From NCBI GenBank assembly GCA_038496445.1, contig JALMLS010000175.1, positions 124,001-188,000 on the forward strand: a DNA stretch of 64,000 nucleotides, read 5' to 3'. Below the pieces are notes generated by a model. That model was not told the origin of the DNA. It saw only the letters and a program-made list of their open reading frames with translations, and did no database searches. Each line of letters starts with the position of its first letter. Position 1 is the stretch's first letter. Shown piece by piece: positions 32,835 through 41,000 of the stretch. The position numbers and the translations under genes are program-made. The DNA is from Trichosphaerium sp. ATCC 40318 (taxonomy: Eukaryota > Protista > Tubulinea).

Positions 32835-34317
32835 TTAAAGTAAGAATAGAGTAGATGATAATATTGCAAGCACTATATGTGAGGATAGAATCTGCACAGT
32901 TTTTGTTAGCACAAAACAAAAAGTATTGAAGCGTTCACGTACGTTTGCTGTACTTTGTGGTGCGCTTGTTGGCGTAGGTGCTGTTGTGGTAGGTGGTTGG
33001 GTCACCCCACTTGCTGTAGGGGCATCAGATGGTGCATCTGCAGTTGGTTCTGCAGGTGTTGCATCGGTAGGTTCGACAGGTGAAGCGGTAGTTGTTTGCT
33101 GTGGGTGAAGATAATCAAAGCTTTTCCCTGCAACTGAGACTGTATAAGAATCTATACATCCAGCTTCAGATCCTTGACATTGGCCAGTAATGTACAGTGT
33201 CTTTCCATCTACACCACCAAAATCAAGGTTTGTTGGTCTTTCAAAAGTTAAATTGATAGTTTCGCCTTCAGTTCCTTGCGGGGTTATACGAACTACTTTG
33301 GTTCTAGAAGGCTATTAGTTCTTATGATATAATTATTGCATTCCTACCCGCCATGTCTAGTTACGTAAAGGTTACCATCAGTGTCTGGCCTCATCCCGTC
33401 AACATCAACTGTGGCGGTTGCGAATTCATAAAACATTCGTTTGTTGCTTATATCTCCAGTTGGTGTTACATCATACGCCCAAATGCGTTGTCCTTGAGCA
33501 GGGTAGCTTCCTAGAGATTCGCTCACATACAAAATGGAGTCATCTGGACTCAGAGCAATGCCTAGTAGTTGATGTTAAGAGCGCAGAAAGCAGCGTGTTC
33601 TATTTTAAAAGTACCATTTGTACGGCCCATATTATCTTCAAGTATAGTTGGTTTGCCATCAATACACTTCCATAGCTGTCCTTTACCAGCGTCAAAGTCC
33701 ATACCACTCATAAAAAGTAATCCTGACGTCGTAGTAGATAAAGCTAAGTCGTTAGGGAAGCCTAAATAATAGGTGTTTAGTACTCATTTTTCCAACGAAA
33801 TTTTTTTGGGAGAACCTTGGAGCATTGTATCGTTGCTGCACGTGATATTATAAGACTTATCTGGGTATACAACGACAACCCTCTTATTGAGTTTATCGGC
33901 GACATAGAGCACACCTTGACGGTCAATTCTAATGCCATTGAATTGTGAATTACTGGCACCTAACACAGTGATTGGAAAGAAAATACTACGAGTAAAATAG
34001 AGTACCTCCTGGCATTGTAAAGTACAAACTTGAGGTTTTATTTGGGTACACCTTCCCAATTGTTCCTCTGTCGTCGTTATTGGCAGTAGGAGAGTAGTTT
34101 ACGGCGTAAAAATTACCATCAGCGTCAAAAGCAGCGCCTAGAGAGAAATTTAGGTTTTGTTTTTGGAAAGCAGCGTGTAATCGCTTAGGATTGTTTTCTT
34201 ACCTTCTATAAAGCGTCTAAATCCAGTGATGCTCTCAGCAGTCGCAGTTTGTGGCTTGACACATGATAAAAACGATAAACAGAGTAGTATTTCTATTATC
34301 CACGATGATTTCGTCAT
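32835..34317 (-). CDS. SMP-30/gluconolactonase-family beta-propeller with signal peptide, Pro/Thr stalk and GPI-type tail
   Basis: MTKSSWIIEILLCLSFLSC; EGAAFDADGNFY; FNGIRID; PNDL; NGIALSPDDSILYVSE; DGMRPDTDGNLYV; PTNLDFGG.DGKTLYIT; P/T-rich linker; ends STANILSSHIVLAILSSTLFLL*. Confidence 0.88.
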
Positions 34318-34884
34318 TGTAAGTGCAAATGTCGTTGGTTGATAAACACTGCTCCATTGACTTGGCAAAGACCATTTGTGCTTTGACAGTTGTTCACAGA
34401 GCGTTTACTTTCTGATGCTAACCACGTGATCAAAATCCCCAAGAGACTCGAAAATAGAAGTCGCGAAATAAATTTGACACATATACAAAGACTATGCCAA
34501 TTGTACTGGTTCAAAGTAGACACGTTGATCTACACCCAGCTGGTTTTTAAATACGTGTACAAATACGTTAATTCTTGTGATGTCTAGAAAAGTATACAAG
34601 GTATTACCAACGCACGAACAATCTTATCACTTATTCATTTTTGCAAAGTATATCTAAGACTGTCTCGCGATATGAGTTATACTCCATAGGCTCTTTGGTA
34701 TTAAAAGAGACTTAATGAGATAAAAAAATTGTGGAACATCAGCGCAAAGAAGGTATTCTTCAAAAGAGAACGAAGGTAATATTGCTACCAAATACAAAAG
34801 TTAACTTAATGGGAAAGCTAAGTAGACCAATTAGTTTCTGAGATGGTTTGCTTAACAACAATGTAGATGTAATACAACACGCTT

Positions 34885-37589
34885 TTATTCTGTTATTTCT
34901 TTGGCCTTAGTTTCTTCAGTCATTGCAGCGTTCTTAATATACTCCTTACAGTGCTTAAATAACTTACAGCGCTTTTTAGTTGGTTGATAGGCCAATACAG
35001 CTTCTAAAAGCTCTCCAACAGTAATCTTGTTTTGAACTGTGCAAAATGAAACAAATTCTGTGAGAGCCTATTACGCTAATTAGGTACACTATGTAAGTTT
35101 TATGACAAACCTGAGCGAATTCTGGCTTATTAAATGTGTGATATGATATATCTATGCCGACTTGAGACGCAGCAATAAGTTGCTGTATTGCTTTGAGTTC
35201 AAGGTATCCACCTGTGAACAAAGTTAAAAAGCAGTCTTTTTAGCCAAGAACATACCGAATGCACCGCATCCCTACACAAAGGTTAGAAAGTATATTGTAT
35301 GATTAACGTACCCAGTTACCAGTAGCAACAGATGGATTTTCACCTGGGTCATATTGCTCTGGATTACTCATGGCAATGTATGCTTTGTTTATGTCTCGTA
35401 GTACATACCTAAATTATGTATCAGACGATACTCAGTATTTTAGCTAATTCCGTACGGTTTCAAGAGCTGATCATTTCCTAGATTAACCACAGAATCCATA
35501 GCTATCATAATACTTTAATTTTGAAGTATGCATAAAAAGAGGGTACCAAATATGTGTTTGTTTAGGCAGTCTAATTCACATTTTTTTGTTTTATCTTTGT
35601 AACTTCCTAACAATTGTTTAATTTGGAAGGCTAGAAAGCAGTTTGAGATGTACCTTCATATTTAAACATAGCTGCATAACCACTGTATTTAGAGAACCTC
35701 TCTGCTCCAGAGATCATTATAGCCTCTTTCGTTCCCATTGTTGGACAAAGGAACATTGCCTGTTTTTTGTTTGTTAGGTAGTTGATAGATTTTAGCGACA
35801 TGAGCGTACTACGTAGCACTCTGGTTTTAAAGCAAAAAGTATCTCTTCTTGTACACAGCCACCTTAATTATATGTTAGTTTGTTAGCGATTACAATGGGT
35901 ACGCACCACTTAATGCACCGCCACCAATAGTTCTATTTGCAAAATCAGCGTGGAATTGTGCTTTCGAGTCTTCAATCTTTGTCTCATCATCAACAGTCAT
36001 TGCTACTATAGGCTTCTTACTCTCCTCCCACTTCACATCTTCTGCACCAACCTATATTTATATTAATATTAAGCGTGGTAATTGAATAGCTTACCTTTCG
36101 GTGTATGATGATATTTCCTGACGGTATTTTTTTTGCTCTAGGAGAGCTTAACAGGTTTCAGTGATGGATAAGTTGTACCTTCTTCGAAAGTACTCTAGTA
36201 TACATAATATAATACTCTACGGTGTAGATATAAGCTTATGGGGTTTAAATAATCACTTACTTCATTTGGATCTGAATTTCCTTTTGGAGAAGACACGTGT
36301 GAACTATAAAATAACGGCGTAAAAGAACAATCATTGAAGTGCATCCCTCTAGTCTCGCATTAAGTTGGCCGTTGTAATATTACTTAGGCGTAAAATATAA
36401 GCGTACACGTGCATAGCCGAAGGGTGGGGCAATGTACCCAAGAAAAAGTGTGACAGCAAGCAAGCGACCTGAAAGATGTTAGAATTTTGTAGGTTTTTTT
36501 TTCGAGCAATGTATTCACCTGAGTTCTTGTTAGAACAAGCTTATTATCTTTTGTTTCAAATAAAATAGGTATTCTTTCTGGAAATAACTCCTCTGTACGT
36601 AGTGCCATACTCAAAATAAAAGGCACAATCACCGAAAGAAACTCTTCTACAGAAAATGATTACCCAGCAGAACAAAAAATTCAAATGTTGAGTTCAGTAT
36701 TGTACCTTTTTCTGCTGCTCTATCAGGGAATTTTTTACAACTTTTTTTAGAAAAGTAAGCCCTGTGTATGCTTGTTAACAAGTACATAACGATATTTAAA
36801 TGGTTACTTGAAGAATTCTCCTGCACATGAAGCGTCCAATTCTGCAAAAAGCTCTGTTTTTCCACTAGGTGTTCCAAATTTCTTTAAGAGATCACAAAAC
36901 TCTTGAATGCTATCGACTTTGTTTTGCAATAACTTTTTCCTCGCTTTCCACTTTCCTTTGTCCATATGAGGTAAATAAGCGTACCTATACGCAACACCAT
37001 CTAAATCAAAATAAGAAAAAAAAATCAATTATCACGTGTTAGATTCGAACAACTTGTTGCAACGAACCTGTTACTTTAGTGATAGCTTTGACGATTTTTT
37101 TTCGACAACTGAGAAGTTTTGCCTTTGTTGCTGTTGGACCAAGTATCATCTGATGCTTCCTCTTTCGATGTTGTCTGTAACCTTAATGAATCAACAAACA
37201 AAGTTGAAGTTTTTGGTTTTTTTCTCTTAAATTATCACGTGAGTGTTACCTAGTAGCACCAGCATATCATCGGTTTGCGGAAACTTATGTAAAGCATCAA
37301 AGAATGTCTTTGAAGTCGTAGTAACGATTCTGTACGCTTGTTCGTTTGGATGGCGAAAGACGCCGTTAATAGTTGAAACAAACCATTGTAACGCCGTTAA
37401 CATCTACAAAACATTAATAAAACTGTATTGGCCGTTTATTTTAGATACTTCTGCTTTAGTTGTTCCATCTTGGGATGTAAGGGACTCTAAGAGCTCTTCA
37501 AACGTTTCCTTAAAGGTTGCAGTTAATGTAGTTAGCGATTGAAGGCTTACTGTTGGTATTTTATGTTCTTTTAGCGCAGAGTTTCCCAT
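34885..37589 (-). CDS. PARG: Poly(ADP-ribose) glycohydrolase with N-terminal PUB-like domain
   Basis: DFANRTIGGGALSGGCVQEEILF..KPE catalytic loop; GAERFSKYSGYA; RDINKAY; ATGNWGCGAFGG.LELK.IQQLIAAS; the N-terminal exons encode a PUB-like segment. Confidence 0.92.
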
Positions 37590-38015
37590 ACTGAGTATAT
37601 AAGTTATCAGCAATAACGTACTACACTTTTACGTGTTAGAAACACAAAACAATTGTTGAATATTTAAGGAAAGTGACTGTTAAGTCACGGCATAAATGTC
37701 ACGTACCATAAGTATATTCTACAGCGCTGTTATTAGCAACGCCAATATAAGTGTTATTTAGGCAATGCAACTACTGTCGAACTTCGGTTCTCACAAGAAA
37801 AAACGTGCCTCCATCCTGAAGGTCCTACTAATTTAGAAAAGAACATAATTTATATTCTCCTGCTTACAAAAAAGAAAGTACCTATGTTGGACTGGAAATG
37901 GAAGGAGCAGATACAAGAATATTCAGCAATTGCCAGCTAGACAGACAGTTTTGAAATTTCATTTTTTTTGGATCTTATGAATTGCTACGACTTTCTAAGA
38001 CGTACACATCGCACT

Positions 38016-41000
38016 ATGGCAGTTCAACCTGCTCGTAGTTACGACATTACATCGCTTTCGGAGTGGAGTGTTGATGGAATTGGTATACAACCCTACTCTT
38101 CATAATTGAAAAGTTAATTCACTGACGCTGCCTCAGAGCATTTAGAATGGCGTTTTCTTGAGACTACAAACGAACAACCTCCACCAAGACACGGACACTG
38201 CGCATGCCATGTAAATGGCCAAGTCATGATATTTGGTGGTTGGGGAGGCACGCTACTGCAAAATACAAAAACTATAACCAAAATCAAAAAACAATACGTT
38301 AATTCTACTCTCTCCGCGTATTCAAGCTTAAAAAGACACTCAAAAGCCTTTTACGATATTTGGTAATTTTCTTACAATCAATAGGTCTTGTTTGGCCTGA
38401 TCTAACCTCTTTGAACCTTGGTACGGCGGATTTATACCATGATAAAACTATTACGTTTGTTTTTACAAAATTCTGGATTTTGATCCAAAAGGAGCGATAA
38501 TTTAGCTAATACAAGCAATTATAGCGACATTGGAATGGGAGAAAAAAAAGCCAACTGGAGAACCACCTGTGAGCACTTTTGCTTCTGGAGAGGTCATAAG
38601 TGACTTCATTTATGTGTTCGGAGGAGAGTCTAGCAGCGCTGTGTATACCAACACACTGACTAAATTGAATACAAGTACACCATAATAGCGATACTGTTTT
38701 TTTACATGTCTTTTTAGATACTTGGCATTGGTCAACTGTTGAGGCTACTGGACAAGGTTCTTATTTCTTAAATTTGGCGTATTTTAGTTTTATTCATTGA
38801 GAGTATAGTACCCGAACCAAGAGCATATCAAGCGAGTACTGTAGTGGCTGGAAAGTATCTTTCTTATTGTTTTTTGATGATCAATCTCTTCGGTTTTTTT
38901 TTTGATCCCTTAACAATCCTTGATTACTCATAATCGCTGGACAAGCCGATCACGATGACGATAGATGGGAGTGGTATCGCGATATACATATTTTTGATCC
39001 TAACACAGACATGTGGTAAACAATCAATATATAGCGCTTTTTTATCTCATTTTCTGCAACAAGGAAAAAAGTGCCTGCGAACAATTGGCCATCTCCACGT
39101 TCTGCACCTACAGTAAATATAGTAGGTATGCTACTACATCTAAATATATAATTTATGTATTAACGAGCTTGTACCAAAGGTACAACAGCGTACATGTTTG
39201 GTGGAGGGTCTTGGGAAGGAAACTATCGGAATATTTCTTATTACTCAGACATTTTCGCACTGGATATTTCACCTATTTGTACGTTCTCGCATTTACCTCT
39301 GTCAATCTATTTAAACTCATCAAAAATAATAGTAAGAGGTGATGTGGGATGTACGCTCTCATGGGAGAAAATAGATGCTATAGGAGACATACCATGTGCG
39401 GGTTTTTTTTGATACAATATCAGTACAGTTTCGTTTACTTTATTATTAAGCTCCACGTGCTGGCCATGCTGCTACAACTATTGGAAATTACATATTAGTT
39501 ACAGGCGGTTATATTTGTAAAGGAAGAACTTGGCCTACAATGGCAGATACTTATTTATTTGATCCCTCAGTATCGAAATGGACAAAATGTTCTGACCTGC
39601 CAAAACCGGTATGCACACATTTTCGTGTCCATCTTCTTTTTGAGTAACATGTCGGGTTTTTTGCTTAGATTGGCAATCACAAAACTATTTATAAAGACGG
39701 GAAGTTATTCTTATTTGGTGGTATCGACTACAACATTGGTAAATCAATCAAAAGAATATTTATGAGAATCTAATTTGGTTTTTTCTTTAAGATGCTGTCA
39801 GCAGTTCAAGCTATTTTATTCAATTCCCAATACGTATGTGGTGATATTTGGTTGGGCGCTGTTTATAATTCTTTAATTAGGACGTAGCTATCACCTTGCA
39901 AAGGCAATGCTTAGGCTATACAATGAAAGAGATGACCAAGAAACTCAAGTAGAATTAGACGATGGAAATATTTTGAAGTATCATAAATTTATAATGGTAG
40001 CACGTGCTCCAAAATGTCTTACTGAGATTGAAAAAAATGGCAAACTCATAAACGTATCTAGAAATACGTTCAATATTTTTTTGGGTTGGATGTATTGCGA
40101 TCAAATTCCACAAAGCCTTCAACTCAATGAAATCATTGAGTTGATAGATTTTTTCATTCGGACTCAAGTTAACAAAAATGTCGTTCTCTATACAGTAGAA
40201 CGTCTATTTAAGTACTTCCCTATGCAATTACATGAAGTAAAGAAAGTATTAAAAGTAGCTGAAAAATGGCCTGAAGATATTTATCATCAACTCATTAAAA
40301 AGATAAAGGAAGGAAATCATAAAGAAAGTACAAGAATTATAAATTGGATAGTCGAACATAGTAAAAAACAAGACATCAAGTCAATTGTTTCTACAGATCC
40401 ACCATTATGGTCATCTTGTGGTGTTTTAGATACACTTGGATATGATATGGATATTATATGGGATAATCATGATACAGCTGATTTTACACTTGTTCTTGGT
40501 GAACAAAAGATAAAATGTCATAAATCAATGTTATCTAGTAGGTGCAGCTACTTTGACGCTATCTTAAGGTCTGGTATGAGAGAAGCTCAGAATCGTAAGT
40601 CCTTAGTTCGTATAGCACGTGATTTTTGTTGATTATGGTTATAGGCGAGTTGGCGTTACCTGAAGGTCAAGAGGAACATGGAATGACGTATACGTCATTG
40701 TAAGTCATATGGTTTTTTTTTTGTTCATTCTTAAAATATTCTTTCATTCAGGTGTGGATTGATTAGGTACTTTTATTCTGGAAGTGTTGATCACCTTGAA
40801 GACCCTTTTGATTGTCTTATGATAATGTCATACAGTGGCTATCTTGATCTTGCATTCTCAGAAGACCACAAAGTACTCATGGACCACTGTAAAGCAAAGT
40901 GAGTATTTAAGATTTTTTCCTGTTCATGAAACTAAATAGGTTTTAGGATGAAAGATTTATCACCACAAGCTTGTGTAAAGTTACTCAGTTGTATGAGGCA

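What the first reader, a model, noticed from the sequence alone, without database searches (positions are those of the whole stretch)
34885..37589. PARG with an N-terminal PUB-like (p97/Cdc48-binding) domain and a myristoylation-type start
Seen: the protein starts MGNSAL and exons 2-3 read ALQWFVSTINGVFRHPNEQAYRIVTTTSKTFFDALHKFPQTDDMLVLLGYRQ, upstream of an intact PARG catalytic domain (GGG..QEE). Known: this matches the PUB pattern L..I..NI..P...KYR.I...N..F.......L..LGF, and PUB domains bind the p97 C-terminal PIM motif (as in PNGase, UBXD1, HOIP). Inference: ADP-ribose removal may be physically coupled to p97 extraction, possibly at membranes. Key PUB residues are altered (KYR to AYR, N to S), so the ligand may differ.
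Basis: partly seen in the sequence, partly recalled or inferred. Interest (0 to 1): 0.7.

Follow-up and report, generated by a model that had tools for sequence, protein, structure and literature searches.

The report
Amoeba PARG with divergent PUB-like head
An expressed 20-exon amoeba gene joins an apparently working poly(ADP-ribose)-removing enzyme (PARG) to an N-terminal PUB-type docking domain, a pairing I found in no paper, but this PUB copy lacks the residues known to grip the p97/Cdc48 tail and the start is a poor myristoylation signal.

Summary
On the minus strand, 34885-37589, there is one 20-exon reading frame of 593 codons. All 19 introns are GT..AG, 40-68 nt long, and keep the phase.

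- **Expression:** spliced cDNA contigs cover most of the gene. One carries a template-switch adaptor at 37645, so MGNSAL is the first AUG.
- **PARG:** the catalytic signature is intact (DFANR, GGG-7-QEE, YSGYA, GNWGCGAFGG). Pfam finds both PARG_cat_N and PARG_cat_C.
- **PUB:** exon 2 alone hits Pfam PUB at E=6.6e-5. Its three nearest named ESM-Atlas clusters are all PUB.
- **E2/E3 junction:** this is the one join between the PUB half and the PARG half not spanned by a contig. It is supported indirectly.

The published PIM-pocket motifs, YxxN(x)9Y and [KR]xxN, are both absent, as in SPATA2-PUB, which binds no PIM. Canonical p97-tail binding is therefore doubtful. MGNSALK fails the myristoylation motif at position 6.

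I found no relatives of the PUB exon and no paper describing PUB-PARG.

The scan had already noted the same architecture on two other pieces of this genome, plus PUB-ARH and PUB-NADAR fusions; I did not check these.

The parts
37590..37645 (-). 5' UTR; the cDNA 5' end is at 37645
   Evidence: Contig 5 of run X2 ends at 37645, followed by the template-switch adaptor GTATCAACGCAGAGTAC+GGGG (table 7). There is no ATG between 37645 and 37589.
37551..37589 (-). Exon E1a: MGNSALKEHKIPT, the first AUG
   Evidence: The joint 37507/37550 (42-nt intron) is seen in cDNA.
37449..37508 (-). Exon E1b: 20 acidic, helix-prone residues; the position expected for PUB helix alpha1
   Evidence: The joint 37403/37449 (45-nt intron) is seen in cDNA. 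The alpha1 position comes from mapping onto the UBXD1-PUB elements and is an inference.
37250..37403 (-). Exon E2: core of the PUB-like domain (alpha2 to alpha5), including HPNEQAYR and LLG
   Evidence: Pfam PUB E=6.6e-5, profile positions 6-55 of 82. ESM-Atlas scores to PUB clusters are 0.90, 0.87 and 0.86. Covered by cDNA contig 5.
37068..37181 (-). Exon E3: predicted beta2-turn-beta3 and last helix of the PUB fold; includes the basic cluster HRKRKH
   Evidence: Phase-consistent with E2 and E4. The 3' 78 nt are joined to E4 in cDNA contig 4; this follows from piece boundaries and from bin depths 2.98 and 4.16, which fit only the spliced layout. No Pfam hit on its own. The structural assignment is an inference.
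36706..37000 (-). Exons E4 (36808-37000) and E5 (36706-36761): about 82 residues between PUB and PARG_cat_N with no detectable family
   Evidence: No Pfam or PDB match. Spliced to E3 and E6 in cDNA contig 4.
36095..36646 (-). Exons E6 (36519-36646), E7 (36407-36468), E8 (36261-36348), E9 (36179-36216) and E10 (36095-36137): PARG helical accessory domain
   Evidence: PARG_cat_N E=1.9e-8. Exon table. The introns E6/E7, E7/E8 and E8/E9 are not covered by cDNA. E7/E8 has an alternative 37-nt solution that also keeps the frame.
35810..36051 (-). Exons E11 (35907-36051) and E12 (35810-35862): DFANR..GGG-ALSGGCV-QEE catalytic loop
   Evidence: PARG_cat_C E=3.3e-7. Aligns to human PARG 4a0d residues 262-303. 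The joints are seen in cDNA.
35654..35759 (-). Exon E13: ..AERFSKYSGYA.. (the Tyr-containing substrate loop)
   Evidence: PARG_cat_C E=1.2e-8. Aligns to PARG chains 8adj and 4a0d.
35256..35606 (-). Exons E14 (35547-35606), E15 (35456-35501), E16 (35312-35408) and the 16-nt microexon E17 (35256-35271, GCGAF)
   Evidence: Joints are seen in the cDNA of both runs. The microexon letters lie between joints 35212 and 35311. Exon table.
34885..35211 (-). Exons E18 (35111-35211) and E19 (34885-35067, including the TAA stop)
   Evidence: PARG_cat_C C-terminal end, E=4.7e-4. Joint 35066/35110 is seen in both runs.

Best explanation
This is one expressed gene of an amoebozoan-type genome. It encodes a 593-residue canonical, probably active, poly(ADP-ribose) glycohydrolase. 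The roughly 110 N-terminal residues form a divergent PUB-family domain, followed by about 80 residues with no detectable family and then the PARG accessory and macro-fold domains. Shown here: the gene structure, the expression, the PARG signature, and the homology of exon 2 to PUB. Inferred: the PUB-like head is a protein-docking module that places PARG next to a partner. Because it lacks four of the five positions that hold the Tyr and the C-terminal carboxylate of the p97/Cdc48 tail, it most likely does not bind that tail in the canonical way. It more likely binds another surface or partner, as SPATA2-PUB does with CYLD. N-myristoylation is unlikely (about 0.2-0.3) because position 6 is Leu. 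Basic clusters in E3 and E4 would fit a nuclear enzyme.
For: Gene model: 20 exons, all introns GT..AG and 40-68 nt, consistent phases, a single stop at the end. cDNA: 13 introns are listed as joints and 2 more follow from piece ends and depth arithmetic. An adaptor-marked 5' end lies at 37645, and the neighbouring gene's own 5' end lies at 37984 on the other strand. Contig 5 stops 6 nt past the E2 donor with 3 loose letters. That is what the E3 start GTTACAGAC laid on the intron start GTAACACTC would give. PARG: PARG_cat_N at 1.9e-8 and PARG_cat_C in three exons; alignments to solved PARGs; the GGG-X7-QEE, YSGYA and GNWGCGAFGG motifs read directly. PUB: Pfam E=6.6e-5 and ESM-Atlas PUB clusters. 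Anchoring on the conserved Tyr places every UBXD1-PUB secondary-structure element on E1b-E2-E3. Pocket loss: the motif definitions come from PMC6995525; the sequence has one Tyr only, Gly at the Asn position, Thr at Tyr+4 and Ser at Tyr+7. Myristoylation motif from PMC9018777.
Against: The PUB score (23.2 bits) is below Pfam's gathering score (34.3), because only one exon could be scored. The single-exon AlphaFold model (pLDDT 76) is a generic helical hairpin and matched no PUB structure. The E2/E3 junction is not spanned by a listed joint. No orthologue was found, so conservation of the fusion is untested. Loss of the canonical pocket does not exclude binding to a co-evolved Cdc48 tail. An Asn sits one residue before the expected pocket Asn position. 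Pocket mapping rests on an ungapped anchor at P-N-x-x-x-Y-R, not on a printed profile alignment.
Confidence: 0.6

Rival explanations
1. [quoted passage not shown]
For: PUB homology is real. Other PUB-bearing enzymes such as PNGase are thought to act on substrates leaving p97 (PMC6995525). Unchecked scan notes report PUB fused to other ADP-ribose domains in this genome, which suggests a recurrent functional link. Gly2, Asn3 and Lys7 are favourable for NMT.
Against: Both pocket motifs, YxxN(x)9Y and [KR]xxN, are absent. Mutating single residues of these motifs weakens or abolishes p97 binding in UBXD1 and PNGase, and SPATA2-PUB, which lacks the first Tyr, binds no PIM. Position 6 is Leu, outside [ACGST].
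Confidence: 0.17
2. There are two transcription units: a small PUB-only protein (E1a-E2, ending at the in-frame stop 6 codons into the intron) and a PARG that starts at the ATG at 37149 inside E3.
For: No listed cDNA joint spans 37182-37249. cDNA contig 4 ends at about 37145, next to that ATG.
Against: Contig 4 carries no adaptor at that end, whereas true 5' ends at 37645 and 37984 do. Contig 5 ends at the donor, not in the intron, with a tail that fits E3. The E2 donor and E3 acceptor are in phase. By the UBXD1 map, the last helix and two strands of the PUB fold fall in E3, so a PUB-only product would be truncated.
Confidence: 0.07
3. The PUB match is spurious, and the head is an unrelated helical regulatory region like the lineage-specific N-termini of other PARGs.
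For: The score is below the gathering threshold. phmmer of the exon against PDB and against 1.84 billion representative proteins finds no PUB protein. The single-exon fold search is non-specific.
Against: Two methods of different kind point to PUB only. The match covers 50 consecutive profile positions without net indel. The hallmark P-N-x-x-x-Y-R-I and LLG-aromatic strings are in register.
Confidence: 0.08

Closest known systems
Canonical eukaryotic PARG (human 4a0d/4b1g, mouse, rat, Tetrahymena 4epp)
   Same: It has PARG_cat_N plus the PARG_cat_C macro fold, the GGG-X7-QEE loop, the YxGYA loop and GNWGCGAFGG.
   Different: The head is a PUB-like domain. From my own knowledge, not tested here, the mammalian regulatory region instead carries NLS, PCNA-binding and mitochondrial-targeting elements.
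PNGase (NGLY1): PUB domain plus an enzyme domain
   Same: An N-terminal PUB is joined to a hydrolase that strips a bulky protein modification. PMC6995525 notes that such enzymes could process substrates leaving p97.
   Different: PNGase keeps Y38, N41, Y51, R55 and N58 and binds the p97 tail. Here only the Y51 equivalent is kept.
SPATA2 PUB domain
   Same: A PUB fold with a degenerate pocket: the first conserved Tyr is replaced.
   Different: SPATA2 binds the CYLD USP domain and has no enzyme domain of its own. The partner here is unknown.
UBXD1 and HOIP PUB domains
   Same: Same Pfam family. The order of secondary-structure elements maps onto E1b-E2-E3.
   Different: Both retain YxxN..Y and K/RxxN and bind PIM peptides. 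This domain retains neither motif.
Other PUB fusions noted in this genome (PUB-dead ARH s1-411830, PUB-NADAR s1-387378 and s1-400859, PUB-PARG s1-397373 and s1-390989)
   Same: A PUB head on an ADP-ribose-processing fold.
   Different: I did not see their sequences. They are unchecked scan notes on other pieces of the genome, and they could be paralogues or allelic copies.

Membership tests
Canonical PARG (PF05028 / PF20811) | PARG_cat_N helical domain and PARG_cat_C macro fold | tested here: met
   PARG_cat_N: 35.0 bits against a cut-off of 25.6. PARG_cat_C: 30.6 and 35.2 bits against 26.3, in separate exons.
Canonical PARG (PF05028 / PF20811) | Catalytic signature GGG-X6-8-QEE | tested here: met
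   GGG in E11, then ALSGGCV (7 residues) across the E11/E12 joint, then QEE in E12. The joint is seen in cDNA. The signature definition is from my own knowledge of the PARG literature.
Canonical PARG (PF05028 / PF20811) | Hydrolysis of poly(ADP-ribose) | not testable with these tools
   This needs an enzyme assay.
PUB domain (PF09409) | Profile match at or above Pfam's gathering score | tested here: inconclusive
   Exon 2 alone gives 23.2 bits and E=6.6e-5 against a cut-off of 34.3, covering profile positions 6-55 of 82. The rest of the domain lies in other exons, and the joined sequence was not scored.
PUB domain (PF09409) | Four-helix bundle plus three-stranded sheet | tested here: inconclusive
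   Only exon 2 could be folded. The model has pLDDT 76 and three helices, and Foldseek found nothing specific. The element-by-element map to UBXD1-PUB fits but is an inference.
PIM-binding (p97-tail-binding) PUB domains | YxxN(x)9Y pocket motif | tested here: not met
   There is only one Tyr between the start and LLGY. Thr or Ser sits at the first-Tyr position and Gly at the Asn position, with an Asn one residue earlier.
PIM-binding (p97-tail-binding) PUB domains | [KR]xxN carboxylate-binding motif at Tyr+4 / Tyr+7 | tested here: not met
   Thr at Tyr+4 and Ser at Tyr+7.
PIM-binding (p97-tail-binding) PUB domains | Binding of the p97/Cdc48 C-terminal peptide | not testable with these tools
   This needs a binding assay. 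The organism's Cdc48 tail was not available.
N-myristoylated proteins | M-G-[^DEFRWY]-X-[^DEKR]-[ACGST]-[KR] | tested here: not met
   In MGNSALK, positions 2, 3, 5 and 7 fit, but position 6 is Leu. The motif is as quoted in PMC9018777. That MGNSAL is the first AUG of the cDNA is shown.

The most novel reading that the evidence does not exclude
In this amoeba lineage a pocket-altered PUB domain has become a shared docking head for several ADP-ribose erasers or readers (PARG here; ARH-like and NADAR in other scan notes). It would tie ADP-ribose removal to one common hub, either Cdc48 bound in a new way or a different partner. That would be a lineage-specific wiring between ADP-ribosylation and protein-extraction or ubiquitin machinery.
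Probability: 0.2. Interest if true: 0.7.

Novelty: new variant of a known kind. Interest (0 to 1): 0.45.

Why it matters
Both PARG and PUB are well known; the combination is not in any paper I could search. From my own knowledge, not checked here, p97 removes trapped PARP1 from chromatin in animals, so a physical PARG-Cdc48 link would interest people who study ADP-ribosylation and p97. The altered pocket makes that link uncertain, but it also makes the domain a natural test case for what PUB folds bind when the PIM pocket is lost. If the other PUB-ADP-ribose fusions noted in this genome are real, the set points to a testable lineage-specific module. Taken alone, this is one more domain shuffle in a genome that seems full of them.

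Tried and rejected
- **Exhaustive protein search.** phmmer of the PUB exon against 1.84 billion representative proteins gave 0 hits at E<=1e-3. The organism's own protein is therefore not in that library, and I obtained no full-length protein id.
- **Word search** with the same exon found no candidate. It only sees proteins of 28-89 aa.
- **Metagenome scans** with the PUB exon and with PARG exon E11 found no relatives.
- **Viral scan** gave one 17-residue match inside a phage tail-gene region, in a frame with no ORF. I rejected it as chance.
- **PDB phmmer** with E2, E3 and E4 found nothing relevant.
- **AlphaFold of exon 2 alone plus Foldseek against PDB** gave a generic helical hairpin with no PUB hit. 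This is uninformative, because the domain spans three exons.
- **Aravind et al. 2015 review** (PMC6126934) is not held.
- **Not done:** the joined spliced protein, or its residues 1-150, was not searched, scored or folded.
- **No second read-laying run** was available to inspect the E2/E3 tail letters.

Full report
**What is in the sequence**

I read the minus strand of 34600-37900, translated it in three frames, and built a model.
- The model has 20 exons. The ATG is at 37589 and the TAA at 34885-34887.
- The CDS is 1782 nt, giving 593 residues.
- All 19 introns start GT and end AG, are 40-68 nt long, and keep the phase.
MGNSAL opens exon E1a. The PUB-like string is exon E2 (37403-37250) plus the first codons of E3 (37181-37068). 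GGG lies in E11 and QEE in E12.
- The window has 38% G+C.
- An earlier follow-up on the same window calls the organism an amoeba. Another note names Trichosphaerium. I checked neither.

**Transcript evidence**

Two public runs hold spliced contigs of this gene.
- Thirteen introns are listed as joints with minus-strand GT..AG ends. These include both introns upstream of E2 (37509-37550 and 37404-37448) and the two introns around a 16-nt microexon.
- Two more introns (E3/E4 and E4/E5) follow from contig 4. Its pieces end exactly at 37000 and 36807. Bin depths 4.16 (36892-37035) and 2.98 (37036-37179) equal 5.5 x 109/144 and 5.5 x 78/144. That fits only if the next 78 letters lie in E3 (37068-37145), not in the intron.
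- Contig 5 begins with GTATCAACGCAGAGTAC+GGGG. From my own knowledge this is a template-switch oligo tail, so it marks an mRNA 5' end at 37645.
- There is no ATG between 37645 and 37589, so MGNSAL is the first AUG.
- The upstream neighbour is a plus-strand gene whose own adaptor-marked 5' end is at 37984. No other gene fits between the two.

**The E2/E3 junction**

This is the one junction between the PUB half and the PARG half that no listed joint spans (three introns inside the PARG half are also uncovered).
- Contig 5 is laid to 37244, six letters past the E2 donor, with three loose letters beyond.
- E3 begins GTTACAGAC and the intron begins GTAACACTC. A spliced contig carrying 9 nt of E3 would align for six letters with one mismatch and leave three loose, which is what was reported.
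- On that reading only about 27 nt of E3 are uncovered.
- Contig 4 has no adaptor at its E3 end.
- I put the single-transcript reading at about 0.9.
- Introns E6/E7, E7/E8 and E8/E9 also lack cDNA cover. E7/E8 has a second, 37-nt solution that keeps the frame as well.

**PARG part**

- Pfam finds PARG_cat_N (E=1.9e-8) in E6.
- Pfam finds PARG_cat_C in E11 (3.3e-7), E13 (1.2e-8) and E18 (4.7e-4).
- E11 and E13 align to solved PARGs of human, mouse, rat and Tetrahymena.
- DFANR, GGG-ALSGGCV-QEE, YSGYA and GNWGCGAFGG are all intact.
- This is a canonical PARG and is likely active.

**PUB part**

- The 58-residue open frame that holds exon E2 hits Pfam PUB (PF09409) at E=6.6e-5 and 23.2 bits. Residues 3-52 match profile positions 6-55 of 82, with no net indel.
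- The score is below the 34.3-bit gathering value, but only about 60% of the profile lies in this exon.
- The ESM-Atlas feature search gives PUB clusters as its three best named hits, at 0.90, 0.87 and 0.86.
- E3 alone matches nothing.
- I used the element list of UBXD1-PUB (PMC6995525) and anchored on the conserved Tyr. On that map alpha1 falls in E1b, alpha2 to alpha5 in E2, and beta2, beta3 and the last bundle helix in E3.
- The fold therefore needs E3, which argues again for one transcript. This mapping is an inference.
- AlphaFold on exon 2 alone gave pLDDT 76 and three helices. Foldseek against PDB returned only generic helical hairpins. That is uninformative for a third of a domain.

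**Does it bind p97?**

- PMC6995525 defines the PIM pocket as YxxN(x)9Y plus K/RxxN. The residues are PNGase Y38, N41, Y51, R55 and N58, equivalent to UBXD1 Y181, N184, Y194, K198 and N201.
- That paper shows that single changes weaken or abolish binding. It also reports that SPATA2-PUB, which lacks the first Tyr, binds no known PIM and instead binds CYLD.
- Here the stretch from the start to LLGY holds a single Tyr, in AYR.
- Counting from that Tyr gives:

| Position relative to Tyr | Residue here | Pocket role |
|---|---|---|
| -13 | Thr | first Tyr (PNGase Y38) |
| -10 | Gly (an Asn sits at -11) | Asn (N41) |
| +4 | Thr | K/R (R55) |
| +7 | Ser | Asn (N58) |

- I rate canonical p97-tail binding at about 0.15-0.2. 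A different partner, or a different mode of binding, is more likely.

**Myristoylation**

- The motif quoted in PMC9018777 is M-G-[^DEFRWY]-X-[^DEKR]-[ACGST]-[KR].
- MGNSALK fits at positions 2, 3, 5 and 7 but has Leu at position 6, which the paper describes as dominated by Ser.
- I rate myristoylation at 0.2-0.3.

**Relatives and literature**

- The PUB exon has no hit at E<=1e-3 among 1.84 billion representative proteins.
- It has no word-sharing candidate and no relative in JGI metagenomes.
- PARG exon E11 found none in the metagenomes either.
- One viral-contig match is chance.
- Conservation of the fusion is therefore untested. These blanks say little about longer proteins or about architecture.
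- No paper in the library holds 'PUB domain' together with PARG, and none of the ten that pair 'PUB domain' with ADP-ribose concerns PARG.
- InterPro architecture tables could not be consulted.

**Earlier notes of this scan**

- The same architecture, PUB-PARG with a myristoylation-type start, was noted on two other pieces of this genome (s1-397373, s1-390989).
- PUB-dead ARH (s1-411830, followed up) and PUB-NADAR (s1-387378, s1-400859) were also noted.
- I could not see those sequences. They are leads for the common-docking-head idea, not support.

**Verdict**

- The gene is real and expressed.
- It is a new domain combination for PARG, with a divergent PUB head.

Noticed in passing
window 35256-35271 (-): A 16-nt microexon encodes GCGAF of the PARG GNWGCGAFGG loop, flanked by 40- and 44-nt introns. 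Both cDNA runs carry it.
   Followed up: partly
window 37028-37038 and 37231-37241 (-): CACGTGATAAT (E-box core) occurs exactly only twice in the 64-kb window, in the two introns that flank exon E3. At up to 1 mismatch there are 8 hits against 1.19 expected. Its meaning is unknown.
   Followed up: partly
window 37984-40900 (+): The divergent neighbour has an adaptor-marked cDNA 5' end at 37984. It carries Kelch repeats followed by BTB, an LZTR1-like order. It shares a 338-bp intergenic region with the PARG gene.
   Followed up: partly
window 32838-34400 (-): The downstream gene has an SMP-30/gluconolactonase/LRE-like (SGL) domain and a Thr/Pro/Ala-rich tail.
   Followed up: partly
window about 37150-37170 (-) and about 36940-36965 (-): Two basic clusters, HRKRKH in the predicted beta2-beta3 turn of the PUB-like domain and KGKWKARKK in E4, are candidate nuclear localisation signals. 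They would sit oddly with a membrane anchor.
   Followed up: no
window 34928, 35156, 36839, 36922, 37594: There are five single-letter differences between the cDNA contigs and the window. One of them (35156 G>A) is shared by both runs, so the runs probably come from a different strain or allele than the assembly.
   Followed up: no
window 37509-37550 (-): Intron 1 is 42 nt, in frame and free of stops, so retaining it would insert 14 residues without breaking the protein.
   Followed up: no
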